From positions 1-64,000 of IMG/VR virus record IMGVR_UViG_3300007513_000001: a stretch of DNA of 64,000 nucleotides; one strand, 5' to 3'. The position numbers and the translations under genes were made by a program. Of the stretch, positions 19,319 to 33,435 are shown piece after piece (within the stretch, counting starts at the first letter, position 1; each line of letters starts with the position of its first letter). The notes beneath the pieces were generated by a model. That model did not search any database, was not told where the DNA came from, and saw only the letters and a program-made list of their open reading frames with translations.

Positions 19319-19348
19319 TGTAAAAAACCTTGCGTAATATGGTATAAT
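19319..19348 (+). promoter_or_regulatory. early-type promoter TGTAAA-N18-TATAAT
   Basis: Motif match; identical to the copy at 29569. Confidence 0.8.
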
Positions 19349-19368
19349 ACTACTATAAGGTAAGGAGG

Positions 19369-20541: not shown

Positions 20542-20716
20542 TAAATGCAAATACAGAGATTACGATAGCAATGAATGGAAGAACGGAATCATATTGGATA
20601 TTCGCGGTCCGTTTAGTGCAAAAACATATGTTATCACTGGGACCGGTCACTTTACTGGTGAACTAGAAACAAGAACAAGCCACTATGTTACGAGAGCAAA
20701 AAATGAAAGTCGGTGA
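20528..20716 (+). CDS. SH3/KOW-like miniprotein (MKVGDLV family)
   Basis: MKVGDKCKY...NESR. Confidence 0.65.
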   Translation: MKVGDKCKYRDYDSNEWKNGIILDIRGPFSAKTYVITGTGHFTGELETRTSHYVTRAKNESR

Positions 20717-20939
20717 CCTGATTCGGTATAACGCTGCCGATTCTCGTAATAAAACTCTTGGGCTTGTTATCGAGCTGAAGCCTGGATGGCTATTTAATGA
20801 ACCCACGGCTACGATTCAGTGGCTACGAGTAGCGCGATATATGCCTAGAGCGTGTTCAAGAGGCTGGGATGCATCAAAACCAACCCCGGGTGACATATGT
20901 TCTCATCCACAAGGCAGCTGGTTTGAGGTGGTTTCGTGA
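20703..20939 (+). CDS. SH3/KOW-like miniprotein (MKVGDLV family)
   Basis: MKVGDLIRY...FEVVS. Confidence 0.65.
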   Translation: MKVGDLIRYNAADSRNKTLGLVIELKPGWLFNEPTATIQWLRVARYMPRACSRGWDASKPTPGDICSHPQGSWFEVVS

Positions 20940-21133
20940 AAATCGGTGATTTAGTAATATACCAGTGGGGAGCTGCGCACGAGCCAAAACACCCAGATGT
21001 AGTTGGGACTGTTTTGAGCTTTCCAGCAGCTTCTCACCCTAAAGAATTTCAAAAAATTGAAGTGTTAACAGAGCATGGAGTGATAGAAAAGTGGGTCATG
21101 CAGTTTTGTAAGGTGATTAATGAATCCAGGTGA
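20936..21133 (+). CDS. SH3/KOW-like miniprotein (MKVGDLV family)
   Basis: MKIGDLVIY...KVINESR. Confidence 0.65.
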   Translation: MKIGDLVIYQWGAAHEPKHPDVVGTVLSFPAASHPKEFQKIEVLTEHGVIEKWVMQFCKVINESR

Positions 21134-21323
21134 TCTTGTAAGAAATAAAAACTCTGAAGGCGGAGAACTTGGGATCTTCATAGGCATGCGTACGTTTAAA
21201 CACAACGCTCCCTCAAATCCAGGCGCAGAAGACTACACTTGCGCTGAAGTTTATTGGCCAGAGCGTTCTGGAAAATACGCCGTCGGGACAATCCAAACTA
21301 ATTTGATTGAGGTGGTTTCGTGA
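21120..21323 (+). CDS. SH3/KOW-like miniprotein (MKVGDLV family)
   Basis: MNPGDLVRN...IEVVS. Confidence 0.65.
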   Translation: MNPGDLVRNKNSEGGELGIFIGMRTFKHNAPSNPGAEDYTCAEVYWPERSGKYAVGTIQTNLIEVVS

Positions 21324-21550
21324 AAATCGGTGATTTGGTGCAAGTTTCTGATTGTGGAAACGAAAAAACAAGAGATCTTGATTGGGACTGTAATTGTTTC
21401 TTTTGCAAGGGAAACTCAAACCGCATAGGATGTGTTCTTGACGTTGCGACTCGAAATGGTTGGGTGGTTATGTTCGACATCGGAGACTGTAGGCTTGATG
21501 CCTTTGACGAAGCTAACGGAAGAGTGAGGGTGATTAATGAAAGTAGGTGA
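21320..21550 (+). CDS. SH3/KOW-like miniprotein with CxCxxC insert
   Basis: MKIGDLVQV...CNCFFC...RVINESR. Confidence 0.65.
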   Translation: MKIGDLVQVSDCGNEKTRDLDWDCNCFFCKGNSNRIGCVLDVATRNGWVVMFDIGDCRLDAFDEANGRVRVINESR

Positions 21551-21737
21551 CTTGGTTCGCAACAGTTGTGACAGTGGGTATCCACCACAAGAGACTGGTA
21601 TTATTACCAAGTATGTCGAATGGAAAGATGGCGAGACGAGAGATCACCCATATGTTCTATTTGAAGTGCTTTGGGATTCTGGTATTATTAAAAAATGTTC
21701 CGAAAATCAACTTGAGGTCGCCAATGAAGGTCGGTGA
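21537..21737 (+). CDS. SH3/KOW-like miniprotein (MKVGDLV family)
   Basis: MKVGDLVRN...LEVANEGR. Confidence 0.65.
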   Translation: MKVGDLVRNSCDSGYPPQETGIITKYVEWKDGETRDHPYVLFEVLWDSGIIKKCSENQLEVANEGR

Positions 21738-21912
21738 TTTGGTAAAAGTTACGCTCCCAAGCAACAGCTTTTTAGATGGAAAAATCGGAACAGTTGTATT
21801 ATCTGAAAAATATCAAGATCCCATATATGGTATTTGTATTTTAATCGATGAAAAAGTGTACGGGTTTAAAGAAAATGAAATAAAGACAATCAATGAAAAG
21901 GAGTTAAAATGA
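21724..21912 (+). CDS. SH3/KOW-like miniprotein (MKVGDLV family)
   Basis: MKVGDLVKV...IKTINEKELK. Confidence 0.65.
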   Translation: MKVGDLVKVTLPSNSFLDGKIGTVVLSEKYQDPIYGICILIDEKVYGFKENEIKTINEKELK

Positions 21913-22352
21913 AATATTGTATTGAGTCTGTGGCTGACAAGCCCGAACTTTGGAAAGATGGAGACCCAGTTCGCCCAGAGCTCAACGTCATATATAAAAC
22001 TAAGCCGGGTCGTTATGTCTATGGTTTGAAGGACGAAAACGGAGAATACGTTTCCTTTTGTTGCGTTGCACGAACAAAGGGGATACCTCAAGACATTATG
22101 TCTCTCAGCAATTTAACTTCAGTAGAAGGTACAATCTATGTACCTTATACAGTTTGGAGCTTACGAAAAGGAGCTGGAAAGGCGATTATCAATGCGCTGC
22201 TCGGTTTAGCGCGTGAAGAAAATTCTGGAATCGAAAGAGTGGTGACACTATCTCCTAGAACCGAAATGGCTAGAAACTTTCATTTGAGAAATGGAGCTAT
22301 TGAACTGGCAGTAAACGTTGTTTCTATGAATTTTGAATATAAGGTCTATTAA
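21909..22352 (+). CDS. GNAT-like phage protein
   Basis: YTVWSLRKGAGKAII...VTLSP...FHLRNGA. Confidence 0.55.
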   Translation: MKYCIESVADKPELWKDGDPVRPELNVIYKTKPGRYVYGLKDENGEYVSFCCVARTKGIPQDIMSLSNLTSVEGTIYVPYTVWSLRKGAGKAIINALLGLAREENSGIERVVTLSPRTEMARNFHLRNGAIELAVNVVSMNFEYKVY

Positions 22353-22354
22353 TC

Positions 22355-22555
22355 ATGAAAACCGGAGATCTAGTTCAGCACCACCCTTTCGGCAGTAAAG
22401 ATGAACACATCAAAGCTATTTACGAAGAGCACGATGCAGACTTTAGAATCGGGCTAATCATAAAAGAGCGAGAATCATTTCGTTTAGTCTCTCCCGAGAA
22501 AGGAAAACCCGCGTGGTATCAAGTAGAAGAACTAAAAATAATTAGTAAATCTTAA
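22355..22555 (+). CDS. SH3/KOW-like miniprotein (MKVGDLV family)
   Basis: MKTGDLVQH...LKII. Confidence 0.6.
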   Translation: MKTGDLVQHHPFGSKDEHIKAIYEEHDADFRIGLIIKERESFRLVSPEKGKPAWYQVEELKIISKS

Positions 22556-22664
22556 ATTTAACCATGTACACCTGGGCATTCGTGATTATCTTTTAATAGC
22601 TGGAAGAATTGCCTAATGGGATTCTAACAGCGCAGTTACTCGCTTACAAAAAAAGGAGGAAAGC

Positions 22665-23099
22665 ATGACTACTGCAATTACACGCGTTGGCCCGGGACTT
22701 TTGGGCAGCAACGTTTTTGATACAATTTTTGACAGCTTCGTCACTGACATGCCACAATATGTACGGCAGTCTACCCAAGGTTACCCTGTTGCTGACATCT
22801 ATACTAATGAAGATGGGATGACAGTAATGGAATTTGCCTTGGCTGGATTCTCGCGGAGCGAACTTAACGTAGAAGTTAAACCAGAAGTTCGCAGCATTAC
22901 TATTTCAGCGCAAGCCGAAGGTGATAGCTCGAGTCCGTCTGGTCGGCGCATCGCTCGTCGATCTTTCACGAAAACTTTTGTGAATTATGATGATGATCTA
23001 GATCTCACGAGCGCTGAAGCTACGTTTGAAAACGGGTTGCTGTCGATCGTTGTTCCCCGTAGACCCGAAACGCAACCGGTTAAAATTAAGATTTTTTAG
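22665..23099 (+). CDS. small heat shock protein (Hsp20)
   Basis: YPVADI...EFALAGF...RSFTKTF...ATFENGLLSI. Confidence 0.9.
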   Translation: MTTAITRVGPGLLGSNVFDTIFDSFVTDMPQYVRQSTQGYPVADIYTNEDGMTVMEFALAGFSRSELNVEVKPEVRSITISAQAEGDSSSPSGRRIARRSFTKTFVNYDDDLDLTSAEATFENGLLSIVVPRRPETQPVKIKIF

Positions 23100-23123
23100 T
23101 AATCTTTTCTCTGGTTTAAATTG

Positions 23124-23152
23124 CAAGCGGGTTTAAAAAGCCCGCTTGTTTT
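23124..23152 (+). terminator. intrinsic terminator
   Basis: CAAGCGGG/CCCGCTTG stem followed by T run. Confidence 0.75.
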
Positions 23153-23220
23153 GTATATAATGATTATGACCGTGGCGAATGCCTCAAAGACATTGATATG
23201 CGTTTAATAAAGGAGAGTGA

Positions 23221-23532
23221 ATGTCTAGAAAAAATATCCACCGTGCTGGACCGTATAAGAGAGAAGAAGTTATTGTTGGTTTTAGAAAAGAAGAAGATGA
23301 AACTTTTACAAAGATAACAAAAATCATGTCTCGTGATTGGAAAACTGGGGGGATTAAAAACCAGAAAAAGAAAAAGCCAGTCGAAGAGGGTCCATATGAA
23401 CTAGCGACCGTTGAAGATTATGATGAGAAAATGAACTATCAAGACATAGACGGCACTGAGCTATCGATATATTTTAAAAAGGTTGGCGATTTTAAAAGAG
23501 TAGAGATTGATGAGCCAGAGGAAGATGAGTGA
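23221..23532 (+). CDS. hypothetical protein
   Basis: AGGAG RBS. Confidence 0.65.
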   Translation: MSRKNIHRAGPYKREEVIVGFRKEEDETFTKITKIMSRDWKTGGIKNQKKKKPVEEGPYELATVEDYDEKMNYQDIDGTELSIYFKKVGDFKRVEIDEPEEDE

Positions 23533-23786
23533 AAGTAGGAGATTTAGTTAAATACAGAGGCTGGTCTCATAATGCTAGTTTCGAGCATGTTTCACGAAGT
23601 CGCGACCCTTTGGCAATAGTGGTCCAGACTCGTGCAGAAGATTCAGAATATCATAAAAGAATTAGGGTTATGTGGGTGGGAGAAGAAATCCCGATTCAAG
23701 CTCAAGTAGTTTCTACAAACGGAAATAGGTTTAGTAGCTGGTGCTCCCCTAAATATTTCCACGTTGTTAGTAAAAAAGGAGATTAA
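23529..23786 (+). CDS. SH3/KOW-like miniprotein (MKVGDLV family)
   Basis: MKVGDLVKY...VMW...FHVV. Confidence 0.65.
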   Translation: MKVGDLVKYRGWSHNASFEHVSRSRDPLAIVVQTRAEDSEYHKRIRVMWVGEEIPIQAQVVSTNGNRFSSWCSPKYFHVVSKKGD

Positions 23787-23945
23787 AATGAGAGATTTTA
23801 TTTATTCTAAGCACTTTAGTGCTGGTTTAGCTTTGCTAAATGGTTATTTTTGCATTCAATCTCTAAACCATAGCCAGTGGGGTTGGGCTTTTTTAAGCGG
23901 CGCGTTCTGTTGGCTGTGCATAGACAATTGGCGGCGGTCGGGATA

Positions 23946-24248
23946 ATGTTTAAGTGGATTAAACATCGACTAATGCATAAGTTGCAGCATGTGAGCTGGT
24001 CATCAATTAAGAAAACTTTTAAAGAGCATGGATTGGCTCTTGTTGTCATCATAGTTGGGTGGGAAATTATTGAAGATGTTGGATTTCCACTGCTTTTTAT
24101 ATTTCTTGGAAACCACGTTCACCCTGTTTTTTATACTGGCGCGCCGGCAGCATGGCTACTCTGCCTTCATTGGTTGATGGTGCCCTTAACGTGGAAATGG
24201 TGGATTAAAATCAGCGGTGAAAAAAATGAATCTAGGCGACTTAGTTAA
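23946..24248 (+). CDS. membrane protein
   Basis: Two hydrophobic helices. Confidence 0.55.
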   Translation: MFKWIKHRLMHKLQHVSWSSIKKTFKEHGLALVVIIVGWEIIEDVGFPLLFIFLGNHVHPVFYTGAPAAWLLCLHWLMVPLTWKWWIKISGEKNESRRLS

Positions 24249-24426
24249 TCTTTACGCTTATTCTCCTCACGACGCAGAATTAGCTAATACAGTGCTACAC
24301 ACTGGCATCCTCGTCGACTGGGAATACGAAGAGCCCGATGGCGGGTGGAAAGTTTTAGTTGATGGAAAAATAGAGACTTTTACTAAGATGTGGTGGGTTT
24401 GTAGAGCCACGAGAGAAAATCAATGA
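24226..24426 (+). CDS. SH3/KOW-like miniprotein (MKVGDLV family)
   Basis: MNLGDLVNL...GILV. Confidence 0.6.
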   Translation: MNLGDLVNLYAYSPHDAELANTVLHTGILVDWEYEEPDGGWKVLVDGKIETFTKMWWVCRATRENQ

Positions 24427-24635
24427 ATGCGATAATCGACCTTCACGGAATAAAGCACGAAGATGTTACAAGCGTTATGATTGATGCGTGTTCTAAGTAC
24501 GATATTCCTTTTGTGGTGATAACAGGACAATCCTCTAGAATGAAAAGGATTGTTCGTTTCGCAGTGGCAAAGTTCAATCTTTCGGCGAGAGACGCTATTG
24601 ACAATCCAGGCAGGTTGATAGTGGAGGATCGATGA
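24423..24635 (+). CDS. stand-alone Smr domain protein
   Basis: IIDLHG...VVITG motifs. Confidence 0.7.
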   Translation: MNAIIDLHGIKHEDVTSVMIDACSKYDIPFVVITGQSSRMKRIVRFAVAKFNLSARDAIDNPGRLIVEDR

Positions 24636-24868
24636 AGACCGGCGATTATGTTCAAGTCCGCGAAGGAGTCCATGATGATCAAATGCCCAATAAGCGCCGA
24701 GATGGGCTAATTGTAGAAATGGTAGGTCAATATGGGTGGAATAGAGATCCAGATCAAGTGATGGTTATGTTCTCCAATGGAGCTTTTCTTAAATTTCACG
24801 TTTCACAAATCGAAGTGATTAGCGAAGGTCAGCAACAACTACCAAAGAACAAAAAAAGAGAAGATTGA
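24632..24868 (+). CDS. SH3/KOW-like miniprotein (MKVGDLV family)
   Basis: MKTGDYVQV...IEVISE. Confidence 0.65.
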   Translation: MKTGDYVQVREGVHDDQMPNKRRDGLIVEMVGQYGWNRDPDQVMVMFSNGAFLKFHVSQIEVISEGQQQLPKNKKRED

Positions 24869-24876
24869 GTTAATTC

Positions 24877-24906
24877 TGTAAAAAAGTGCTTCCGATATGG
24901 TATAAT
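24877..24906 (+). promoter_or_regulatory. early-type promoter TGTAAA-N18-TATAAT
   Basis: Motif match. Confidence 0.8.
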
Positions 24907-24930
24907 AATAATATAATCAAGGAAGAAACA

Positions 24931-25098
24931 ATGGAAGAAAAAGAATGGGGATCAATCGAATACCCAATCATTCTAGGCTATACCAAGCCTAATGGTGAGA
25001 AGTATAAAGTGGTAATTCATAACTCAGATCAGTCCGAATATGAATATGATAAGATGTTTGAGTTGTGTGGTGAAGATGTACCATTCAGTGTAGATTAA
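24931..25098 (+). CDS. hypothetical protein
   Basis: AAGGA RBS after promoter. Confidence 0.55.
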   Translation: MEEKEWGSIEYPIILGYTKPNGEKYKVVIHNSDQSEYEYDKMFELCGEDVPFSVD

Positions 25099-25106
25099 GG
25101 TGATCA

Positions 25107-25286
25107 ATGAAAATCGGTGATTTGGTTCGCACCCCGGAGGGTAAGCTTGGCATTATTGACAAGTACTACCCAAACTGGGATGACTCTAGCAAAGCCAGTT
25201 ACCCATGGTATGTGAGTATCATGCCTGACTGGAGTGTTGAATACTTCAGAACAGGACAACTCGAGGTGATCAATGAAAATCGGTGA
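25107..25286 (+). CDS. SH3/KOW-like miniprotein (59 aa, not in ORF track)
   Basis: MKIGDLVRT...LEVINENR. Confidence 0.65.
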   Translation: MKIGDLVRTPEGKLGIIDKYYPNWDDSSKASYPWYVSIMPDWSVEYFRTGQLEVINENR

Positions 25287-25428
25287 CATGGTTAGGTTTA
25301 AGGACCTGGAGAAAAGAACTGGCGTATTACTCGAATACGGCGCGTTTTCTGATGGTTGGTGGTCTATTCTGGATTCTGATGGACAGATGGTTGTCTGGCC
25401 AGAATCCCAACTTGAGGTTATCATATGA
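25273..25428 (+). CDS. SH3/KOW-like miniprotein (51 aa, not in ORF track)
   Basis: MKIGDMVRF...LEVII. Confidence 0.65.
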   Translation: MKIGDMVRFKDLEKRTGVLLEYGAFSDGWWSILDSDGQMVVWPESQLEVII

Positions 25429-25637
25429 GACTCGGTGATGCAGTAAAAATAACAAAGCCAAAGCTTTATCAGCAGAATCTGATAGACGTGGTCGGAATTA
25501 TCGTAGAGCATTTCCCTCAAAGAGATCCACCTTACCCTCCTGGAAAAGCTATTTGTAGAGTCTTTTGGCCAGATGGAAGCGTCGATAAAACTTGGCGCCT
25601 GTGTAAAGAGCTGGAGGTAATCAATGAAAGTCGGTGA
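25425..25637 (+). CDS. SH3/KOW-like miniprotein (MKVGDLV family)
   Basis: MRLGDAVK...LEVINESR. Confidence 0.65.
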   Translation: MRLGDAVKITKPKLYQQNLIDVVGIIVEHFPQRDPPYPPGKAICRVFWPDGSVDKTWRLCKELEVINESR

Positions 25638-25848
25638 TCTAGTCATAATGCCAGGAGAAACACTTGCAAAGGTTTCCGGAAAACATAGCATAGGGCTTGT
25701 TGTTGCTGATGATTATGACAAAGTTGCGCCTAGTCGCGTTGCTGGTCGAAAGAAGTCAAGAATCGGTATCATGTGGACAGACGGCAGTGGACGTGTGGAT
25801 TATGAGCCCAGAGATTGGCTGGAGGTGATTAGTGAAGAAAAACTATAA
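25624..25848 (+). CDS. SH3/KOW-like miniprotein (MKVGDLV family)
   Basis: MKVGDLVIM...LEVISE. Confidence 0.65.
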   Translation: MKVGDLVIMPGETLAKVSGKHSIGLVVADDYDKVAPSRVAGRKKSRIGIMWTDGSGRVDYEPRDWLEVISEEKL

Positions 25849-26161
25849 ATTTGTAGAATTTAAATCTGGTTTTGGAGTTAGCATTCAAGCTAACTCTAGT
25901 AACTATTGCGAGCCTCGAAACGACGAGGGTCCCTACACCGCGGTGGAGCTCGGTTTTCCAAGCGCTGAGGACTCTTTAATTATCAAATATGCTGAAAATA
26001 AAAGTGAGCCGACAGAAACAGTTTATGGCTGGGTGCCTGTTGGTGTAGTGAAAGCGCTCATGATTAAACACGGCGAAGTTATAGCAGGCACGATGCCGCC
26101 ATTTAACATGAACATAGAGCAATCAGCAATTTTGGCGGAGGCTTTACTAGATGAAAATTAG
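25832..26161 (+). CDS. hypothetical phage protein
   Basis: GFGVSIQA...YCEPR...VELGFPS...VYGWVP. Confidence 0.6.
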   Translation: MKKNYKFVEFKSGFGVSIQANSSNYCEPRNDEGPYTAVELGFPSAEDSLIIKYAENKSEPTETVYGWVPVGVVKALMIKHGEVIAGTMPPFNMNIEQSAILAEALLDEN

Positions 26162-26489
26162 AAACTCTATTTTAGATAATCAGACTATCGTTGTTGAAAT
26201 TGAAAATGGAGACACGGGAGAAGCAGTAGATTTGTTGAATATTAAAAAGAATGGCTATGCAGTTTTTGGCGACAACGTAGAGTTGCCGATAGCAGTAATT
26301 GATGGAAGACTTCGAAACGAAGATTGGTTTACCGATAATCACCTCTTAGCAATCGAAGCTCATGAGCTCGGACATATTCTTACAAATTCAGAAAAAGAAC
26401 CCGTGGCTGAACGAAAAGGTATTCGCTTGCTTGACTCCGCGGGTTATATTATTGCTGCAAACATTTTACGCGATAGAGGCATTGCATGA
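26151..26489 (+). CDS. HExxH metallopeptidase-like protein
   Basis: AHELGHIL followed by E..AE. Confidence 0.55.
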   Translation: MKIRNSILDNQTIVVEIENGDTGEAVDLLNIKKNGYAVFGDNVELPIAVIDGRLRNEDWFTDNHLLAIEAHELGHILTNSEKEPVAERKGIRLLDSAGYIIAANILRDRGIA

Positions 26490-26665
26490 AGGTGGGTGAT
26501 TTGGTTACTGATAATCGCATCGCGCCATTTACGGTTGGTTTGATCGTTGGGTGGTATGATACACCCAAAGGCGTAGTGAATGTCGCTTGGTGGCAGCGTG
26601 GAAAGCTAATTTCTACCGCCCCGTGTCATATATCTAAATTAGAGGTGTTGAGTGAAAGTCGGTGA
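26486..26665 (+). CDS. SH3/KOW-like miniprotein (59 aa, not in ORF track)
   Basis: MKVGDLVTD...LEVLSESR. Confidence 0.65.
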   Translation: MKVGDLVTDNRIAPFTVGLIVGWYDTPKGVVNVAWWQRGKLISTAPCHISKLEVLSESR

Positions 26666-26828
26666 CCGAGTAAAAATAGCTCCTATGTGGAAGTACGAAG
26701 AAGCTCGGGGGAATATTATTAAGATAACGAAAGAATACACTGTGGTTTCTTGGGACGGGGTGAATGGTGAATGGCATTATACGAAGAAGCAAGCGGATAA
26801 AATCCAGGTGATTAATGAGCACGCTTAA
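26652..26828 (+). CDS. SH3/KOW-like miniprotein (58 aa, not in ORF track)
   Basis: GTG start, KVGDRVK...IQVINEHA. Confidence 0.65.
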   Translation: MKVGDRVKIAPMWKYEEARGNIIKITKEYTVVSWDGVNGEWHYTKKQADKIQVINEHA

Positions 26829-27135
26829 TAAAATCTGGGCTTGGATGAACGAGCACAAATATTTTTCAGTTTTTGGATCTGGAGTCATCATTGACTTTTG
26901 GGCAAACTGGTATTCCTATGCTATTGTTCACGATTGGATAGTGCTACAAGCGGTGTTGGGGTTTTTCTTGCCAATTATGAATTTTCCATTTATTCACTGG
27001 TTTATTGATGAAAAGGATATTGCGGAAAGGTTTAAATTGTGCCTTTGCAGCGCATTTGCAATGGTTCTTGGTTCGACATTGATGTTGCTGATGATTAGAG
27101 AAGGGATTGGATTGGGCACGGATGCAATTCCATGA
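26815..27135 (+). CDS. multi-pass membrane protein
   Basis: Three hydrophobic segments. Confidence 0.55.
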   Translation: MSTLNKIWAWMNEHKYFSVFGSGVIIDFWANWYSYAIVHDWIVLQAVLGFFLPIMNFPFIHWFIDEKDIAERFKLCLCSAFAMVLGSTLMLLMIREGIGLGTDAIP

Positions 27136-27326
27136 AAGTCGGCGATCTAGTAGTTAGAAAAAAATGGGATACTATAGAACACAATCCAACAAAGACAGAC
27201 GGTGAGATTGGTATCGTCATCGAATCTGGCGTTTACGTTGGAAGGAAAGATGTCAAGGTGGCATGGTCAACAGAGATCAGTACAGAAAAAAGCCACAAGC
27301 TAGAGGTGGTCAATGAAGTGCGGTGA
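27132..27326 (+). CDS. SH3/KOW-like miniprotein (MKVGDLV family)
   Basis: MKVGDLVVR...LEVVNEVR. Confidence 0.65.
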   Translation: MKVGDLVVRKKWDTIEHNPTKTDGEIGIVIESGVYVGRKDVKVAWSTEISTEKSHKLEVVNEVR

Positions 27327-27504
27327 TATGATAATGATTCGAGGAGAAAATATTTGGCGTGAAGTTTGTGGAGAAATATATAAGCCAATCTATTGCATAG
27401 GGTTTTATCCTGGCCCGAATCATCTGGCCGCTATAGAGGTTTATGATGGCGCCACAGCTAGAGAAGTTAACGTTGAAGAAATAATTAAATTGGAGAAAAA
27501 ATAA
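27313..27504 (+). CDS. SH3/KOW-like miniprotein (MKVGDLV family)
   Basis: MKCGDMIM; 14-nt overlap. Confidence 0.6.
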   Translation: MKCGDMIMIRGENIWREVCGEIYKPIYCIGFYPGPNHLAAIEVYDGATAREVNVEEIIKLEKK

Positions 27505-27701
27505 TGAAAGCGGGAGATCTTGTAATGTTTATTGACGAGGGCACATATGCTAAGTGGTTCTTTGGGAAGATGGCTATCGTTGAAAAAGCTACGCCAGGAA
27601 AAAGAAGTTGCCGTGTTCGGTGGCTTGAGCCTGTGAAATATTTTGATAGATATACCACCATATCAGATTTCGGGTGGGATAGCTTTGAGGTGTGCGATTG
27701 A
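27504..27701 (+). CDS. SH3/KOW-like miniprotein (MKVGDLV family)
   Basis: MKAGDLVMF...VRW...FEV. Confidence 0.65.
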   Translation: MKAGDLVMFIDEGTYAKWFFGKMAIVEKATPGKRSCRVRWLEPVKYFDRYTTISDFGWDSFEVCD

Positions 27702-27882
27702 ACTTCTTCTTAAGGTGGTAGTTTGGAGATTAATCTCTATTTTGATCACTCTAGCTGTGATGTTTGGACTAACTGGCGATATTAAATCTGCTACGGGTTT
27801 CACTATATTTTTGCATATTTTACTAACTGGGGCTAACTATGGATTTGAAAAATATTGGCAACGAAGATTTGAGGGTCGGTGA
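27643..27882 (+). CDS. DUF2061-like small membrane protein (start uncertain)
   Basis: KVVVWR...T...LTG...EKYW pattern. Confidence 0.4.
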   Translation: MIDIPPYQISGGIALRCAIELLLKVVVWRLISILITLAVMFGLTGDIKSATGFTIFLHILLTGANYGFEKYWQRRFEGR

Positions 27883-28072
27883 CCTGGTAATGTATACACC
27901 TGAAGCGGCCTATAACCTTGATAGGAGTGGCGAGACTGCTTTGGTTGTAGAGACTAATATAGATATGTGGGGAGAAGAGATGATTCCCTCTGGAGTAAAG
28001 CTGCTATGGTCCGATGGAGAGTTTGAGACAGCATATTCAGATGAAGTTTTTTCTGTGAACGATTCTCAATAA
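27869..28072 (+). CDS. SH3/KOW-like miniprotein (MKVGDLV family)
   Basis: TTG start, RVGDLVMY; 14-nt overlap. Confidence 0.6.
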   Translation: MRVGDLVMYTPEAAYNLDRSGETALVVETNIDMWGEEMIPSGVKLLWSDGEFETAYSDEVFSVNDSQ

Positions 28073-28101
28073 ACGTTATATGTAATTTATAGTGGTCTCT
28101 T

Positions 28102-28314
28102 TTGTCCCCCGGGAGGCGCCTTATGGATCTCATAACCGTAGCCATTGTTTTGTCTTTAGTGTATTTCTCGATATCTGCAGTCATGTGGGTAGCGTCAAAG
28201 AAAGAACTAAAAGAACTAGAAAGAAAAAAAGATGCAGAACTGCAGCATTTAAATAAAAAGCTCAAGCGTCTAGCAGATAAAGCTCGAAGAAGAAGAACTG
28301 GACGAAATCGATGA
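28102..28314 (+). CDS. small membrane-anchored coiled-coil protein
   Basis: N-terminal TM helix, basic tail. Confidence 0.5.
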   Translation: MSPGRRLMDLITVAIVLSLVYFSISAVMWVASKKELKELERKKDAELQHLNKKLKRLADKARRRRTGRNR

Positions 28315-29159
28315 GCAGAGAAATCCAACTACTACTCGACAGACTTTTTGAAGAATATGAAGAATTAAACCGAGATGCTTTGCAAGTCATATTAGATGGA
28401 CCATGTAAAATCAGTGAAAAAACCCTTAAAAGAGATTTAGTTATAGGTTCAAAAAAATACGGACTCGGAAGAATGCAAGAAGTTTCTCTCATTACTTCTG
28501 CATGCTCCAACCCCAAGTGGACTAGTGTATTAGAGGTTGGCGTTGGGTATGGTATTTCTACTGTTTCGTTTGCTGGCGCTTTAAAACGTAGAGAGTCTGC
28601 TCATGAAAACCCCAGTGCGCCGAAAATAGTATTTCAAACAGTCGATTTTGCGCGCTGTTTAATACCAGGGTCAAGGGGCCAGGCACCATCTCGACAAACC
28701 AACATAAAAAATCTTCAAAAGCGTATCAAACTAAAAAACTGGAATCATTCAGACGTTGGCTCAAATCAGTGGTTTAGAGAAAAACTATTAAATAAAAAAT
28801 CAGCCCAAAAATTTAATGTTGCTTTCATCGATGGAGATCATTCTTATGAACAAACACGCAAAGACTGGAATAACTTAGAAAAGCTACTAGAAGAAGATTT
28901 CATAGTATTCTTTCATGATCTCATGTGGCGAACCCAAGGCTTAAGATACCCCAACACAGCTCGGAAAGCTTTTGAAGAAATTTCAATAGAAAAATATAAC
29001 AAGCTAATTTTGAATACGCCATTTAGGGTAGGAGTCGTTTATCCAAAAAGCAACTCCAGCACAGAAGAATGGCTAACTAATATTCTAGAAGATTTACACA
29101 TATCGATTAGAGAAACTAATCCAATAAATTGCTCGGAAGCTGAGAAACACGGGTGGTAA
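28311..29159 (+). CDS. class I SAM-dependent methyltransferase (Methyltransf_24-like)
   Basis: VLEVGVGYGIST; FIDGDHSYE; VFFHD. Confidence 0.8.
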   Translation: MSREIQLLLDRLFEEYEELNRDALQVILDGPCKISEKTLKRDLVIGSKKYGLGRMQEVSLITSACSNPKWTSVLEVGVGYGISTVSFAGALKRRESAHENPSAPKIVFQTVDFARCLIPGSRGQAPSRQTNIKNLQKRIKLKNWNHSDVGSNQWFREKLLNKKSAQKFNVAFIDGDHSYEQTRKDWNNLEKLLEEDFIVFFHDLMWRTQGLRYPNTARKAFEEISIEKYNKLILNTPFRVGVVYPKSNSSTEEWLTNILEDLHISIRETNPINCSEAEKHGW

Positions 29160-29162
29160 CTA

Positions 29163-29354
29163 TTGACATATCTTCTTTTCGTTAATGGTAAGTTTTTTGA
29201 TTCTACGAGAAATTGTGATTTAGCATTTGCTTGGTGGAAAGATTGGCTAGATTTAGGACACCGAGCTGGACTGCGATTCGTAGGAGATGATGACAAAGAA
29301 GCTTTGAGGTGGTTAGTTCCTGCAGGGTGCTTGAGAACAGAGACACTGAGATGA
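29163..29354 (+). CDS. hypothetical protein
   Basis: ORF within the operon. Confidence 0.4.
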   Translation: MTYLLFVNGKFFDSTRNCDLAFAWWKDWLDLGHRAGLRFVGDDDKEALRWLVPAGCLRTETLR

Positions 29355-29530
29355 AAAAAGGCGCAAGAGTTAAGATTTTAAATACTTTCGAAAGAGGAAC
29401 TGTGGAACATGTTCATTATATTAGCTCTGCCGGTAGCTGCTCTGTGTATATATCTCATATTGTCGTTTTACTAGACGATGGTAAAAAAATTCATATTGTT
29501 GACTCTAGACTTTTAGAAGTTCTTGAATAG
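29351..29530 (+). CDS. SH3/KOW-like miniprotein (MKVGDLV family)
   Basis: MKKGARVK...LEVLE. Confidence 0.6.
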   Translation: MKKGARVKILNTFERGTVEHVHYISSAGSCSVYISHIVVLLDDGKKIHIVDSRLLEVLE

Positions 29531-29568
29531 ACTAAAAGCCCTGTTATTCAAATAAAAATAATTTATTC

Positions 29569-29598
29569 TGTAAAAAACCTTGCGTAATATGGTATAAT
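29569..29598 (+). promoter_or_regulatory. early-type promoter TGTAAA-N18-TATAAT
   Basis: Motif match. Confidence 0.8.
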
Positions 29599-29624
29599 AC
29601 TACTATAAGGTAAGGAAAGAATCA

Positions 29625-29981
29625 ATGGCGCGCAAACGACGCAACGACAGAAATCACGTCATCTACCTCCTCACCGGTCCCACCGGTCAGAGATACGTGG
29701 GAGTTACCTTCGCACGAGGACGAGCTTGGAAACGATCTGCTAAGATTCGATGGGAAGCCCACGTTCGAAATGCTCTCGATTACGATCGTCAAAATCTCTT
29801 GAGCGTTGCAATCCGTGAGCATGGTGCTTCGAACTTCTCACGTGAAGTTTTAGAAATTGTTCGAGGAAAGCAGAACGCTCACAATCGAGAGAGGGAGCTC
29901 CTCCAACTCATCCAACCCGAGCTTAACATGGAAGGGATGGGACGTAAAGTTAACAGCGCACAGCGCGAGGCGGTAGCATGA
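29625..29981 (+). CDS. GIY-YIG domain protein
   Basis: VIYLL...RYVGVT...RWEAH...RE. Confidence 0.7.
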   Translation: MARKRRNDRNHVIYLLTGPTGQRYVGVTFARGRAWKRSAKIRWEAHVRNALDYDRQNLLSVAIREHGASNFSREVLEIVRGKQNAHNRERELLQLIQPELNMEGMGRKVNSAQREAVA

Positions 29982-30085
29982 AAGTCGGTGATTTGGCTCC
30001 TTGTTTGTCTCATTGCAGAAATACTACTCTGGTCTCTGGTTTTTGGCGGAATATTCGCCGCGGCTCTTCTCTTCTAGGAAAAAAA

Positions 30086-30475
30086 ATGGCTCTTCAATTT
30101 TCTGATCAATCTTTTCTCGCAGACGTTTCTTCTCCAGCAGCTACCTCTCAAGGTGATGGCGCTGTTCTGGTTCCTCTCTCGGTTTTTGGAGACTCTCCTC
30201 CAGATTCGGTTTCAGTTGTAGATTTTGCTGGTCGAGAAGTTTCGTTTGTTCTTTGTGGTCGTACGTATTTTACGGATTCGGCCGCAGGTACTGAGGTTTT
30301 CGCTGGTTGGTCTTATTGGGAAGATGAAGCCTCGGATTATCCTGGCTCTCCAGCCGTTCAGTTGTTTGTTCTTTCTCCTGATTTCGCGGAAGCTGATTAT
30401 CGTGAGGTTTATGATGGCTGGGAAGAAGCTAAAGAGTTTGAGGTCGTCGAACCCGCGGGAGAGGTAGCGTCATGA
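30086..30475 (+). CDS. hypothetical protein in an A-depleted insert
   Basis: AGGA RBS then ATG; lacks Asn, Ile and His. Confidence 0.5.
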   Translation: MALQFSDQSFLADVSSPAATSQGDGAVLVPLSVFGDSPPDSVSVVDFAGREVSFVLCGRTYFTDSAAGTEVFAGWSYWEDEASDYPGSPAVQLFVLSPDFAEADYREVYDGWEEAKEFEVVEPAGEVAS

Positions 30476-30660
30476 AAGTCGGAGATTTGGTAAAGTTCAG
30501 ATGCAACAAGGCGCATTTTGACCGTGCGTACCTGATAATAGAAATCGAAGTTCTTCCCGAAAGAGGAACATTTGTTCGCCTTGTCGGTGATGGACCATCG
30601 GCTTCCGCGCCGATGCCAGTTCAACAATTTCCCTCTTGGCGCTTGGAGCGTGTAGCATGA
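30472..30660 (+). CDS. SH3/KOW-like miniprotein (MKVGDLV family)
   Basis: MKVGDLVKF...LERVA. Confidence 0.65.
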   Translation: MKVGDLVKFRCNKAHFDRAYLIIEIEVLPERGTFVRLVGDGPSASAPMPVQQFPSWRLERVA

Positions 30661-30857
30661 CAGCCGCCGATTGGATCAAGGCAATTAACGAAGCAGAGGG
30701 CAACGAGGTTCTGCGCTTGTGGAATGAATGCCTTAATAGATGTTGTGACAATGAAGCCGACGAGATTACACTCGCGGTTCACAAGGCTTGCGTTGATAAA
30801 GTCTTGAATACAATTGGATTTCCAAGAGACGCGGAGGCTATCAATGAAAGTCGGTGA
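30657..30857 (+). CDS. hypothetical helical protein ending in the junction peptide
   Basis: MTAADW...EAINESR. Confidence 0.55.
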   Translation: MTAADWIKAINEAEGNEVLRLWNECLNRCCDNEADEITLAVHKACVDKVLNTIGFPRDAEAINESR

Positions 30858-31020
30858 TGTAGTCAGACTCTGCTCAAACAATTATCCTCAATACAAGGAT
30901 AAAATCGCTATGCTTATGTGGACACACACTCCGCAGGCGTGGGTGGTGCTAGTAAACCAGAAGCTCCATCCTTACGTTGTTCATGAAGATGACATGCGAG
31001 GACTCAATGAAAGTCGGTGA
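30844..31020 (+). CDS. SH3/KOW-like miniprotein (MKVGDLV family)
   Basis: MKVGDVVRL...LNESR. Confidence 0.65.
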   Translation: MKVGDVVRLCSNNYPQYKDKIAMLMWTHTPQAWVVLVNQKLHPYVVHEDDMRGLNESR

Positions 31021-31228
31021 TTTGGTAATTGTTAATGTGCCTATCGACTGGAACACCGTCCACCCAGAGTCATGTCACGGCGTGATTGTAGACAAGAAAG
31101 TCGTCCGCGAGAACGACGGTATCGACGTAAAAAATCGGACTTGGTTTTATGTCTTGCGTAGTGATACGGGAACTATTGAAAATTTTCACGAAGACTGGCT
31201 GGAGGCAGGAAAAAATGAAAGTTGGTGA
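31007..31228 (+). CDS. SH3/KOW-like miniprotein (MKVGDLV family)
   Basis: MKVGDLVIV...NESW. Confidence 0.65.
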   Translation: MKVGDLVIVNVPIDWNTVHPESCHGVIVDKKVVRENDGIDVKNRTWFYVLRSDTGTIENFHEDWLEAGKNESW

Positions 31229-31403
31229 TATGATTAAGATGGCAACATCCTACCGAAATGACCTGAACCGTCTTGGACTGCTAGTTAGAATCGGTAGACG
31301 ACATAATAACCGACGCGTTGGCACGGTCTTGACAGCCACCGGTATTGAAACGTGGCCACTAGATTCTCATTACGAATACGAGGTGATTAGTGAAAAAAGG
31401 TGA
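31215..31403 (+). CDS. SH3/KOW-like miniprotein (MKVGDLV family)
   Basis: MKVGDMIK...EVISEKR. Confidence 0.65.
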   Translation: MKVGDMIKMATSYRNDLNRLGLLVRIGRRHNNRRVGTVLTATGIETWPLDSHYEYEVISEKR

Positions 31404-31692
31404 TCTGATATCTCAGACCCGGCGACCGGGTGGCTTTTGTACCTTAGTAGAGATATTCAAATCGGAAGAAAGCTACGACGAATCAGACCATGGTTGGACA
31501 GAATATTGTTGGCCAATCTTCCGAGTTGTTCACCCAGCTGAAGGTTTGATCGATGACCCCTCTTATTATTACTGCACTTTAGAAGAACAAGAAGCTTTTG
31601 AAAGGAGACACTTGAAATATTTGTTGCAAAAAGAAGGAGCTGCAGTTCCTGATTGGCTAGAAGAGGAGATTGAAAACGATGCAAATCGGTGA
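31390..31692 (+). CDS. SH3/KOW-like protein with C-terminal extension
   Basis: GTG start, KKGDLI; 14-nt overlap. Confidence 0.6.
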   Translation: MKKGDLISQTRRPGGFCTLVEIFKSEESYDESDHGWTEYCWPIFRVVHPAEGLIDDPSYYYCTLEEQEAFERRHLKYLLQKEGAAVPDWLEEEIENDANR

Positions 31693-31837
31693 TTTGGTAA
31701 AATTTAGAGCGTCCGGACAAACCGTCCTCTACCTTGGATTAATAGACGAGATGTACACATTTTATCATGCTAAGTTCGGCCTTGTGGAACTCTGGGAGCA
31801 GAGGTTTGATATTAGCAAAGTAGAGACAGTAAAATGA
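31679..31837 (+). CDS. SH3/KOW-like miniprotein (52 aa, not in ORF track)
   Basis: MQIGDLVKF. Confidence 0.6.
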   Translation: MQIGDLVKFRASGQTVLYLGLIDEMYTFYHAKFGLVELWEQRFDISKVETVK

Positions 31838-32007
31838 AAGTCGGTGATCTAGTCCAAATAGTCAAAACTAGCAAACTAGAAATGGGCGTTCTCATTGAAA
31901 GATATATTCTACACGCTGAATATCGATTTGATGTTTTGCTAGAAAGTGGAAAGATAGCTAAAGGGTTGCCTATAACTTACATAAAGGTAATCAATGAAAG
32001 TCGGTGA
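31834..32007 (+). CDS. SH3/KOW-like miniprotein (57 aa, not in ORF track)
   Basis: MKVGDLVQI...IKVINESR. Confidence 0.65.
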   Translation: MKVGDLVQIVKTSKLEMGVLIERYILHAEYRFDVLLESGKIAKGLPITYIKVINESR

Positions 32008-32254
32008 TTTGGTAAAAATGAAAAAAGGGCACTCTCCGCCAGGCGTCATCGTAAAAATCGATAAAGATTTCTACGGCGCTCGACAAGCATTTAAAGTTTC
32101 AAAAGTAGATCGTGGCAAGTGTATTCGACCAAACATGGTTAATATTATTGCGCCGACAAAAGATGGGATTCGACATCGTCTTTTAATCTGCTGGCCAGAC
32201 GTCGGATTTTCTTATGAATATAGCTCCGATGTAGATGTGATAAATGTTCAATAA
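31994..32254 (+). CDS. SH3/KOW-like miniprotein (MKVGDLV family)
   Basis: MKVGDLVKM...VDVIN. Confidence 0.65.
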   Translation: MKVGDLVKMKKGHSPPGVIVKIDKDFYGARQAFKVSKVDRGKCIRPNMVNIIAPTKDGIRHRLLICWPDVGFSYEYSSDVDVINVQ

Positions 32255-32298: not shown

Positions 32299-32343
32299 AC
32301 TATTATAAGGAACAAGGAATAACCCTCACACCTCGGAGCTCTA

Positions 32344-32805
32344 ATGACTCTCACCACTCGCGAACAGGCCCTCCTCACCAACACTGACGTCCTGGGTTAC
32401 ATCCAGGCGGAGAACGCCAAGCGCGACGCGCAGGCGAAGGCTGAGGGCTGGCAGTTCTGGACCCTCATGGCTGAGAGCCTGGCGGATGAGCACGCCAACG
32501 TCTACGAGCTAGAGCACCGGCTTGCGTGGGGAACTTACAGCGACGTGTACAAGGATGCATATTTCATGCGCCCTCACATTGACCTTAGCGACTGGACCCT
32601 TAGCGAAATCGAGGCTAAGATTGAAGAGATTTGTGAAAGCGAAGCTCGTGCTGCAGAGCTAGAAGCTGAATGGCTCGCTGAGCAGAAGCAGATGGAGCGT
32701 GACCAGATCGCGCTTGGCCTGACGGACACAATGTCGTGCGGCGAAGAGGTAGAGCTGGAGGAATGGGAAATCTACGAGGCGAGAGCCGAAGCAATGGGAT
32801 ACTAA
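32344..32805 (+). CDS. hypothetical early protein
   Basis: GGAG RBS; GC-rich codons. Confidence 0.7.
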   Translation: MTLTTREQALLTNTDVLGYIQAENAKRDAQAKAEGWQFWTLMAESLADEHANVYELEHRLAWGTYSDVYKDAYFMRPHIDLSDWTLSEIEAKIEEICESEARAAELEAEWLAEQKQMERDQIALGLTDTMSCGEEVELEEWEIYEARAEAMGY

Positions 32806-32894: not shown

Positions 32895-33269
32895 ATGGCA
32901 TACGTAAAGCCTGAAGACATAGTACTTATTAACGAGATGCATTTTCAAAACTTTATGGATTATCGAGAGAAGAAAAACCTCGCAACTCATTGGGATTGGA
33001 TGCATTTGCCTCTAGGTACTATGATGGAAGTCGAAGAACTCATCTTCCGAACCACATCTCGGTGGAAGAGCCGAAAGAAAACTGACGAAGATGGAGAAGA
33101 ATATTCCAAGCGCTCTAAGGGTCGGTCGTGTTGGGTAAAGTGCAAAGTTGTTACTCCTCTTCACTTATCTGGTACGTCGCATACAATTCCCTCTTGGCTA
33201 CTGAAAAAAGCAGTGGTCTCTCATATTATAGCAGAAAGAAACGATGAAAAAGAAGTCCAAGCAAAGTAA
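32895..33269 (+). CDS. hypothetical protein
   Basis: GAGG RBS. Confidence 0.55.
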   Translation: MAYVKPEDIVLINEMHFQNFMDYREKKNLATHWDWMHLPLGTMMEVEELIFRTTSRWKSRKKTDEDGEEYSKRSKGRSCWVKCKVVTPLHLSGTSHTIPSWLLKKAVVSHIIAERNDEKEVQAK

Positions 33270-33435
33270 ACGCGAACAGCAGATTTGGAATCAAATCAAA
33301 GCAGATCGCGCGATTGCTCGTAAAGAATATTTCGAAAAGGGTGGAGAAGCGTGCCGCTGGAATGGTGGCTTGCATTTGGTCACTCGAGTTAGAACATATT
33401 ATAAGCGTAAAAACAAGTGGGGCGATCGATACTGA
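33244..33435 (+). CDS. small basic hypothetical protein
   Basis: ORF within the operon. Confidence 0.5.
   Translation: MKKKSKQSKREQQIWNQIKADRAIARKEYFEKGGEACRWNGGLHLVTRVRTYYKRKNKWGDRY

What the first reader, a model, noticed from the sequence alone, without database searches (positions are those of the whole stretch)
29997..30430. Strongly A-depleted, T-rich insert captured inside an MKVGDL cassette
Seen: right after ATGAAAGTCGGTGATTTGG (29978) composition switches abruptly. By hand count A is 67/420 (16%) over 30001-30420, against 18/60 (30%) at 30481-30540. The insert has its own RBS and ATG (30086), and the 129-aa product has no Asn, Ile or His and a single Lys. It ends by rejoining a normal junction at 30472. 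Inference: a recent foreign acquisition (for example from a T-rich ssDNA or rolling-circle element), or the product of adenine-directed mutagenesis.
Basis: partly seen in the sequence, partly recalled or inferred. Interest (0 to 1): 0.6.

Follow-up and report, generated by a model that had tools for sequence, protein, structure and literature searches.

The report
Conserved A-poor phage gene, not mutagenesis
The adenine-poor, thymine-rich stretch is real. It is an ordinary conserved gene for a small acidic protein of uncultured marine jumbo phages, plus a remnant of its membrane-peptide partner gene, and related phages show the same base bias, so it is neither recent foreign DNA nor adenine-directed mutagenesis.

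Summary
Positions 30001-30420 hold 67 A in 420 bases. This is the most A-poor and most T-skewed stretch of the window and of the whole 293-kb phage genome.

- The complete genome has no reverse transcriptase and no template copy.
- A is kept at codon position 2 and in GAA/CAA codons.
- The protein is under purifying selection (dN/dS 0.1-0.4).
- The same junctions occur on contigs from at least three samples, so it is not an assembly chimera.

The segment has two coding parts.
- 29988-30077 is a 29-codon hydrophobic mini-ORF, T-rich at codon position 2. It is probably the 3' remnant of a 50-aa membrane-protein gene that precedes the orthologue in a relative.
- 30086-30418 is the 111-codon core of a small acidic, lysine-free orphan protein. 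It is T-rich at position 3 and has 4.5% A at position 1.

Orthologues down to 46-52% identity, in phages of different GC content, share the bias while their neighbours do not, even at dS up to 1.4. A 31%-identity relative has normal composition. The bias is therefore a maintained clade trait: about two thirds comes from amino-acid make-up and one third from U-ending codons.

The abrupt left edge is a recombination joint behind a mobile GIY-YIG endonuclease gene. The protein's function and the reason for the bias remain open.

The parts
29565..29615 (+). Promoter-like cassette with an extended -10 (TGgTATAAT). It is one of three near-identical copies in the genome (19318, 29568, 32268) and heads the transcription unit that holds the finding.
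   Evidence: The same cassette stands upstream of the membrane-peptide gene and upstream of the endonuclease gene in L035.
29625..29981 (+). Free-standing gene for a GIY-YIG-type homing endonuclease (118 aa). Its stop codon overlaps the cassette ATG at 29978.
   Evidence: PHROG 5123 E 6e-6; Pfam GIY-YIG E 0.0065, below the curated cut-off. Relatives of 39-71% identity lie in varied phage contexts. There is 86% aa identity to L035:5511-5843, and that homology ends near 29956.
29978..29996 (+). Stub of a mini-gene cassette: the 19-nt start that encodes MKVGDL. This is the left copy of the direct repeat.
   Evidence: There are 25 matches with up to 3 mismatches in the window, against 0.04 expected. 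Normal cassettes continue with GTAAA, whereas this one switches to unrelated sequence.
29988..30077 (+). A 29-codon hydrophobic, single-helix mini-ORF (GTG start, TAG stop 8 nt before the next ATG). It is probably the 3' remnant of a 50-aa two-helix membrane-protein gene and accounts for the T-rich leader.
   Evidence: T peaks at codon position 2 of this frame (15 of 29). It resembles the C-terminal helix of L011:371-520 and L035:4001-4153 (BLASTP E 0.004; composition-matched shuffles P 0.006-0.009), with the same stop-to-start spacing.
30086..30418 (+). Conserved 111-codon core of the acidic, lysine-free orphan protein. A is 14.7% and T 38.4%; A at position 1 is 4.5% and T at position 3 is 59%.
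   Evidence: The blastn homology block to relatives is exactly 30077-30419 at 79-88% identity. The AlphaFold2 model has pLDDT 91.6.
30419..30475 (+). Read-through tail of 18 codons plus the stop codon, with normal composition. TGG at 30419 stands where relatives have TAA. The stop overlaps the next cassette's ATG.
   Evidence: The tail is absent from all 16 homologues. It may overlie the degenerate 5' end of the gene that follows the orthologue in L002 and L012, but the similarity was not significant.
30472..30660 (+). Intact mini-gene of the MKVGDL type (62 aa). Its start is the right copy of the 19-nt direct repeat.
29985..30419 (+). Full extent of the T-over-A compositional anomaly (maximal-scoring segment).

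Best explanation
The anomaly is ordinary coding sequence with an extreme but inherited composition.

Two coding parts. The stretch holds the remains of a two-gene unit found in related uncultured marine jumbo phages. The first part is the last helix of a small membrane-protein gene, which is T-rich because hydrophobic codons carry T in the middle. The second part is a gene for a roughly 110-aa, very acidic, beta-rich, lysine-free protein of unknown function.

Source of the A deficit. About two thirds comes from the protein's make-up. Amino acids whose codons start with A (Ile, Met, Thr, Asn, Lys, AGY-Ser, AGR-Arg) are nearly absent, while Val, Ala, Asp, Ser, Phe and Pro are raised. About one third comes from a preference for U-ending synonymous codons.

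Why it is selected. Orthologues that have diverged to saturation at synonymous sites, in phages of different GC content, keep the same bias while their neighbours do not. Selection therefore maintains it (inferred). It is not left over from a recent transfer and was not made by a mutator.

The abrupt left edge (inferred from comparison with relatives). It is a recombination joint. A mobile GIY-YIG homing-endonuclease gene, with its own promoter cassette and a stub of the neighbouring mini-gene, replaced the promoter and the 5' half of the membrane-protein gene. On the right, the ancestral stop was lost and the gene now reads through 18 codons into the next cassette junction.

Most likely reason for the bias (inference, low confidence). 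The gene is promoter-proximal, probably early and strongly expressed. It may be selected to be translated without the A-rich codons that the phage otherwise serves with its own eight tRNAs.
For: Composition
- Counts and rank.
- Split into amino-acid and synonymous parts: genome-average composition predicts about 127 A. The amino-acid sequence with genome codon usage predicts 84. The observed count is 64 (z -4.2).
- At four-fold sites T is 0.60 and A 0.14, against 0.42 and 0.31 in the genome. In Y-ending two-fold codons T is 0.85 against 0.67. In R-ending two-fold codons A is 0.70 against 0.72.
- The same pattern holds against the gene's own neighbours in L002, L006, L009 and L022.

Family
- 16 homologues of 57-92% identity; 22 clusters among 1.84 billion representatives.
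- Orthologue genes have A 0.15-0.20 and T 0.30-0.39 with normal flanks. The 31%-identity L021 member is normal.
- dN/dS is 0.1-0.4 and dS 0.35-1.4.
- The gene is single-copy in this genome.

Leader as a membrane-gene remnant.

Joint, endonuclease gene and promoter cassette.

Coarse gene order shared with L002.

Independent assemblies.

Promoter-proximal position in relatives.

tRNAs
- The phage encodes Leu-UAA, Lys-UUU, Thr-UGU, Pro-UGG, Met-CAU, Asn-GUU, Gly-UCC and Arg-UCU.
- Their cognate codons make up 4 of 110 core codons (3.6%) against 22.9% genome-wide.
- Other A-containing codons make up 31.8% against 41.1%.
Against: - The selective reason is not shown. Avoidance of the phage-tRNA codons is largely what any A-poor gene would show: the regression residual is only z -1.2, and the excess over a uniform A-depletion model is modest (expected 10.1%, observed 3.6%, P about 0.01).
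- U-ending codons in Phe, Tyr and Asp are not the usual signature of translational selection.
- The homology of the leader to the membrane gene rests on a short hydrophobic match (P 0.004-0.009) plus position.
- The direction of the rearrangement is inferred from a few relatives. No empty site was found.
- The high nucleotide identity of the gene relative to its flanks could also mean lateral exchange.
Confidence: 0.72

Rival explanations
1. A mutational strand bias, not selection. The gene is always promoter-proximal and heavily transcribed, so its non-template strand collects transcription-associated changes that enrich T and G.
For: - The gene sits behind strong promoter-like cassettes in the window, L002/L012, L022 and L035.
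- The coding strand is 62% G+T.
- T is raised over C in two-fold codons.
- The adjacent non-homologous leader is also T-rich.
Against: - At four-fold sites the shift is from A to T, a transversion. G and C stay about equal (0.13 each), and A is not lowered against G in GAR/CAR codons.
- A is 24% at codon position 2 but 4.5% at position 1, which no position-blind process gives.
- The endonuclease gene nearer the same promoter, and the mini-genes behind, have normal composition.
- The leader's T lies at codon position 2 of a hydrophobic ORF.
Confidence: 0.1
2. A frequently exchanged mobile module. The gene hops between phages often enough that it never drifts to any host genome's composition, and it reached this phage recently.
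For: - The blastn block to relatives is sharply bounded (30077-30419) and 79-88% identical, while the flanks are unrelated or 68-73% identical.
- Both neighbouring genes look truncated.
- A homing endonuclease gene lies next to it.
- Direct repeats bracket the stretch.
Against: - Coarse order is shared with L002: the membrane-protein gene 3 kb upstream, and a homologue of the gene that follows the orthologue in L002.
- The endonuclease gene is 86% identical to its L035 copy, but the T-rich genes of the same two phages are only 62% identical. The endonuclease gene is therefore the recent mover.
- No sampled background has the composition of a donor.
- dN/dS of 0.11 alone explains the higher conservation.
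Confidence: 0.1
3. Adenine-directed mutagenesis by a diversity-generating retroelement, or a capture from a T-rich ssDNA or rolling-circle element.
For: Only the raw A depletion and T richness.
Against: - No RVT_1 match at E up to 1 in a genome rated 100% complete, while the control genomes gave matches.
- No template copy and no second copy of the segment.
- A is retained at position 2 and in R-ending codons.
- The protein sequence is conserved.
- Every family member examined lies among small dsDNA-phage genes.
- No match in 50,697 phage records by DNA or protein.
Confidence: 0.02
4. An assembly chimera or sequencing artefact.
For: None found. Read support could not be checked.
Against: - The exact 165-aa ORF lies on four contigs. 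Three places from different samples and assemblers (JGI 3300009370, ENA ERZ23498664, ENA ERZ23498697) were read, and both edges are identical apart from a few SNPs.
- The orthologues are real genes under selection.
Confidence: 0.01

Closest known systems
Free-standing homing endonuclease genes of T4-like phages (Seg and Mob types) and the mosaic joints they leave (from general knowledge)
   Same: A small GIY-YIG gene sits between other genes. It occurs in many unrelated neighbourhoods. It is far more similar between two phages (86%) than the genes around it (62%). It lies beside truncated neighbours and a repeat-bracketed joint.
   Different: Cleavage activity and target site are untested. The Pfam score is below the curated cut-off. 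The T-rich gene is not cargo that regularly travels with it, since other copies of the endonuclease gene lack it.
Mobile promoter cassettes that shuffle small early genes in T4-type phages (PeSL elements; recalled from memory, not checked in a paper here)
   Same: A near-identical promoter-like cassette of about 55 nt recurs three times in this genome. The same cassette stands in front of different genes in another phage. The mini-gene junctions are also repeated about 28 times.
   Different: No stem-loop part was seen. Whether recombination really occurs at these repeats is inferred from one joint.
Diversity-generating retroelement variable regions
   Same: Only that adenine is the base affected.
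   Different: There is no reverse transcriptase, no template repeat, no hypervariability and no position-blind loss of A.
Small acidic phage early proteins that mimic DNA or block host defences (Ocr- and ArdA-like; general knowledge)
   Same: About 110 aa, with 18 Asp+Glu against 3 Arg+Lys in the core. It is promoter-proximal among small early-type genes.
   Different: There is no sequence or fold similarity to any solved protein. The best Z is 3.8 for a model with pLDDT 91.6. No function has been tested.
Codon-usage partition between host-tRNA-dependent early genes and phage-tRNA-served late genes (PMC12482277 and the work it cites: PMC8826309, PMC10264068)
   Same: The phage carries eight tRNAs, mostly for A-rich codons, and this gene almost never uses those codons.
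   Different: Here the avoidance reaches the amino-acid level (no Lys, Asn, Ile or internal Met). It is confined to one gene and is only weakly separable from plain A-poorness.

Membership tests
Diversity-generating retroelement (variable region) | A reverse transcriptase encoded nearby or elsewhere in the genome | tested here: not met
   PF00078 gave no match at E up to 1 in the complete 293-kb genome, while control genomes gave matches.
Diversity-generating retroelement (variable region) | A template repeat that differs from the variable region only at its adenines | tested here: not met
   A both-strand scan with A as a wildcard found only A-rich chance matches (at most 53 of 60). No second copy was found by BLAST or profile search.
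Diversity-generating retroelement (variable region) | Hypervariability between copies, concentrated at template-A positions | tested here: not met
   Orthologues are conserved, with dN/dS 0.1-0.4 and 25 invariant columns. A is retained at codon position 2 and in GAR/CAR codons.
GIY-YIG homing endonuclease (the neighbouring gene 29625-29981) | GIY-YIG catalytic domain | tested here: inconclusive
   Pfam PF01541 scored E 0.0065 and 17.2 bits against a cut-off of 22.6. PHROG 5123, a GIY-YIG homing endonuclease family, scored E 6e-6.
GIY-YIG homing endonuclease (the neighbouring gene 29625-29981) | Patchy, context-independent distribution typical of a mobile gene | tested here: met
   There are 11 viral loci at 39-71% identity with different neighbours. 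Identity to L035 is 86%, against 62% for the adjacent gene family.
Nucleotidyltransferase-fold or RsfS-like proteins (for the acidic protein) | Fold match clearly above background | tested here: inconclusive
   Hits recur but are weak: GrpB, Atp25/MALSU1, Pol X, TUT1 and iojap-like chains at Z 2.6-3.8, and an Atlas NTP_transf_2 cluster at TM 0.57. The tool's own note says Z under 8 may reflect only a common arrangement.
Nucleotidyltransferase-fold or RsfS-like proteins (for the acidic protein) | G[SG] ... D-x-[DE] catalytic motif | tested here: not met
   Read by eye from alignments A1 and A5. A single conserved Asp (D46) is followed by Phe-Ala, with no second carboxylate. A profile search of PDB sequences found nothing at E up to 10.
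Mini-gene cassette of the MKVGDL type | The 19-nt start followed by a 50-86-aa body that ends in the next overlapping junction | tested here: not met
   Only the 19-nt start is present at 29978. The body is unrelated, and the orthologues have no such start. The gene lies among the cassettes but is not one of them.

The most novel reading that the evidence does not exclude
The gene may have evolved to be translatable without a whole class of tRNAs. It has almost no codons beginning with A (no Lys, Asn, Ile or internal Met; few Thr; no AGR or AGY) and favours U-ending codons. Its product could then still be made at the very start of infection, before the phage's own tRNAs (Lys, Asn, Met, Thr, Arg-AGA, Leu-UUA, Gly-GGA, Pro-CCA) accumulate. 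It could also be made when host anticodon nucleases have cut tRNA-Lys or its neighbours. That would fit an early counter-defence or takeover protein. Two observations agree with this reading. tRNA genes lie directly beside family members in three other phages. Lysine is absent from 12 of the 25 family members aligned.
Probability: 0.12. Interest if true: 0.75.

Novelty: new member of a known kind. Interest (0 to 1): 0.35.

Why it matters
It removes a false lead: there is no retroelement mutagenesis and no captured ssDNA element here. It also shows how a sharp compositional edge in a phage genome can arise from an ordinary recombination joint next to a homing endonuclease gene.

What remains is a small orphan protein family of marine jumbo phages whose avoidance of A-initial codons and of lysine has been held across deep divergence. 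If that reflects independence from particular tRNAs, it would be a new way for a phage gene to escape tRNA-based limits or defences, and it could be tested by recoding the gene. Otherwise it is a compositional curiosity.

Tried and rejected
Searches and tests that gave nothing
- Overlapping or alternative-frame genes: stops occur in the other five frames of all nine orthologues, no fewer than in within-gene synonymous shuffles.
- Conserved RNA structure: the folding z-score is 0.05 for 30060-30480 and +1.26 for the leader. Rfam gave only a sub-threshold JUMPstart match at E 0.89.
- Pfam, PHROGs, PDB sequence profiles and ESM Atlas features gave nothing for the protein.
- Foldseek against PDB and BFVD: no match at E up to 0.001. 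The best viral hits are uncharacterised proteins.
- Phage GenBank records: no match by blastn or tblastn.
- IMG/VR scan with the family alignment: no confirmed locus.
- Exact-match scans for two pieces of the leader: none.
- The leader as a partial duplicate of the gene itself: marginal (P about 0.04), so dropped.
- The read-through tail as a remnant of the downstream gene seen in L002 and L012: BLASTP found nothing, so this stays only a possibility.
- High expression judged from codon usage of structural genes: the large T3-rich genes could not be identified, so no reference set was available.
- The literature holds no mention of the cassette motif.

Not possible

Operators' notes
- No human-like contig, broken toxin gene or alternative genetic code came up.

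Full report
SETTING
The window is the first 64 kb of a 293,409-bp IMG/VR virus record with direct terminal repeats, rated 100% complete. It is 39% G+C, and nearly all genes lie on the + strand. Its helicase is only 31-36% identical to those of cultured jumbo phages: Tunturiibacter phage Tunturi_5, XacN1, RsoM2USA and phage G. It is therefore an uncultured jumbo phage; contigs that carry homologues of the gene studied here include Tara Oceans metagenome samples.

Between about 16.4 and 32.3 kb lie some 27 mini-genes of 50-86 aa. Each begins with a 19-nt motif that encodes MKVGDL. In most of them the upstream gene ends inside that motif, so the start and the preceding stop overlap.

THE OBSERVATION
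- The stretch is the extreme of the window and of the whole genome for low A, high T and AT skew.
- The maximal T-over-A segment is 29985-30419.
- Of 323 crude genes, this ORF is first for low A, low A at codon position 1 and high T at position 3.

WHAT IS ENCODED
(a) Positions 30086-30418 are the conserved core of a protein family.
- A word search found 16 homologues of 57-92% identity and 97-121 aa, most starting at the equivalent ATG behind a ribosome-binding site.
- An exhaustive profile search of 1.84 billion representatives found only 22 clusters, all but one (632 aa) of 89-120 aa.
- The family is strongly acidic. The core has 18 Asp+Glu against 3 Arg and no Lys, and 12 of the 25 aligned members have no lysine.
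- AlphaFold2 gives a confident beta-rich model (pLDDT 91.6, pTM 0.84).
- That model has no convincing match. The best VIA Z is 3.8, and Foldseek finds nothing at E up to 0.001. There are weak, recurring resemblances to nucleotidyltransferase-fold and RsfS-like chains. I treat these only as a lead, because the catalytic motif is not present.

(b) In this phage TGG replaces the TAA stop of the closest relatives. The ORF therefore runs 18 more codons, of normal composition, to the ATGA of the next cassette.

(c) The 89-nt leader is probably not non-coding.
- In the frame of 29997 it reads as a 29-codon single-helix hydrophobic ORF. It has a GTG start at 29988 inside the cassette stub and a TAG stop 8 nt before ATG 30086.
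- Its T lies at codon position 2 (15 of 29), as expected for Leu, Ile, Val and Phe codons.
- In L011 and L035 the orthologue is preceded, at the same 8-nt spacing, by a 50-aa two-helix membrane-protein gene (A 0.12, T 0.39). The C-terminal helix of that protein resembles the mini-ORF (BLASTP E 0.004; composition-matched shuffles P 0.006-0.009).

The T-rich segment is therefore two coding pieces that are T-rich for different reasons.

IS THE BIAS RECENT, FOREIGN OR MUTATIONAL?
Orthologue genes in L002, L006, L009, L010, L011/L035, L012, L020 and L022 have A 0.15-0.20 and T 0.30-0.39. A at position 1 is 0.04-0.12 and T at position 3 is 0.38-0.61. The rest of each locus is normal. These loci range from about 42% to 50% G+C. 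The 31%-identity member L021, in a 32% G+C locus, has normal composition and normal Lys, Asn and Ile. The trait therefore belongs to a clade of the family.

Pairwise dS is 0.35-1.4 and dN/dS 0.1-0.4. Synonymous sites have turned over while the bias persisted.

Decomposition of the A deficit:
- genome-average composition predicts about 127 A;
- the amino-acid sequence with genome codon usage predicts 84;
- the observed count is 64.

At synonymous sites the signal is a preference for T:
- four-fold sites have T 0.60 against 0.42;
- Y-ending pairs have T 0.85 against 0.67;
- there is no avoidance of A against G (0.70 against 0.72).

By codon position, A is 4.5%, 24% and 15%, where a uniform depletion would give about 14-15% at each. 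Together with the absence of a reverse transcriptase and of any template copy, this excludes adenine-directed mutagenesis. It also argues against any position-blind mutational process.

No overlapping frame, RNA structure or Rfam family explains the composition.

HOW THE JOINT AROSE (inference)
- A promoter-like cassette of about 55 nt with an extended -10 occurs three times in the genome, at 19318, 29568 and 32268.
- In L035 the same cassette precedes the membrane-peptide and acidic-protein pair. A second copy there precedes a GIY-YIG endonuclease gene that is 86% identical to the window's 29625-29981.
- The acidic proteins of the same two phages are only 62% identical, so the endonuclease gene is the recent mover.
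- Homology of the endonuclease gene to its L035 copy ends near 29956. After that come a short tail, the 19-nt cassette start and, immediately, the middle of the membrane-peptide gene.
- Coarse order is shared with L002. The membrane protein at 26815-27135 matches L002:1412-1723 at 77% aa identity. The gene that directly follows the orthologue in L002 and L012 has its homologue at 33244-33435 (51% identity, E 2e-18).

I read this as follows. The two-gene unit is resident. The endonuclease gene arrived with its promoter and a stub of a mini-gene and deleted the unit's promoter and the 5' half of the membrane gene. Mini-gene cassettes were inserted downstream. No empty site was found, so the direction of events is not proven.

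The same joints occur on contigs from at least three independent samples. Reads themselves could not be examined.

WHY THE BIAS?
This is not settled.
- The gene is promoter-proximal wherever the context is visible.
- The phage's eight tRNAs read A-rich codons, five of them A-initial.
- Those codons make up 3.6% of the core against 22.9% genome-wide, while other A-containing codons fall only from 41% to 32%.
- Most of this contrast follows from A-poorness itself: the regression residual is z -1.2, and P is about 0.01 against a uniform model.
- tRNA genes lie beside family members in L006, L021 and L022.

Published work holds that phage late genes lean on phage tRNAs, and that phage tRNAs can bypass tRNA-cutting defences (PMC12482277 and its references 19 and 20). 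On that basis I offer independence from those tRNAs as the most interesting reading, at low probability.

VERDICT
The explanation is ordinary: a conserved gene with an inherited, selected composition, plus a hydrophobic ORF remnant, beside a homing-endonuclease joint. There is no DGR, no ssDNA capture and no chimera. The protein's function is unknown.

Noticed in passing
window 16473-32254: An array of about 27 mini-genes of 50-86 aa. Each starts with a near-identical 19-nt motif encoding MKVGDL. In most, the upstream gene ends (...NESR, stop) inside that motif, so a ribosome-binding site, a start and the previous stop form one repeated junction of about 30 nt. Pfam and PHROGs find nothing for six of them, and no paper mentions the motif.
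   Followed up: partly
window 19318, 29568, 32268: Three near-identical copies of a promoter-like cassette of about 55 nt with an extended -10. These are the only copies in the 293-kb genome. The same cassette occurs twice in the unrelated contig L035, in front of different genes.
   Followed up: partly
L022:41-226: Upstream of the orthologue there is a strong sigma-70-type promoter (TTGACT, a 16-17 nt spacer, TATGAT with TG). It is followed by a tRNA with anticodon CTA, amber-suppressor-like, which ARAGORN labels Pyl. A second similar promoter follows the gene.
   Followed up: no
L021:225-298 and 748-822; L006:4345-4419: tRNA genes flank or lie near family members in other phages. In L021, Ile-TAT lies just upstream and Ala-TGC just downstream. 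In L006, Lys-CTT lies about 580 nt upstream.
   Followed up: partly
window 32300-32800: A G+C-rich island (0.59-0.61 against 0.39 for the genome) holds a 153-aa acidic ORF with no family match. It lies directly behind the third promoter cassette, and its use of the phage-tRNA codons is the second lowest among real genes.
   Followed up: no
window 42615-45831: An AAA_5 (MoxR-like) ATPase gene and a DUF2201 metallopeptidase/VWA gene. Their synonymous sites are strongly depleted in both A and T (z about -12), which suggests a G+C-richer origin. The first also has a 371-aa open frame on the opposite strand.
   Followed up: partly
window 7607-9859 and genome 274609-279563: Eight phage tRNA genes in two clusters: Leu-TAA, Lys-TTT, Thr-TGT and Pro-TGG in the first; Met-CAT, Asn-GTT, Gly-TCC and Arg-TCT in the second. 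Most read A-rich codons.
   Followed up: yes
window 5575-5807: The second-strongest T-over-A segment of the window. It covers most of a 54-aa hydrophobic ORF (5514-5678), the intergenic stretch after it and the start of the next ORF (5772-6266), and looks ordinary.
   Followed up: partly
L026:2795-2868: Between another copy of the GIY-YIG gene and the next mini-gene lies a 23-codon hydrophobic mini-ORF, reminiscent of the one at window 29988-30077. No clear sequence similarity is visible by eye.
   Followed up: no
window 28311-29159: A 282-aa Methyltransf_24-domain protein lies just upstream of the unit. Relatives carry Methyltransf_21 and sulfotransferase genes a few kb from the orthologue.
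   Followed up: no
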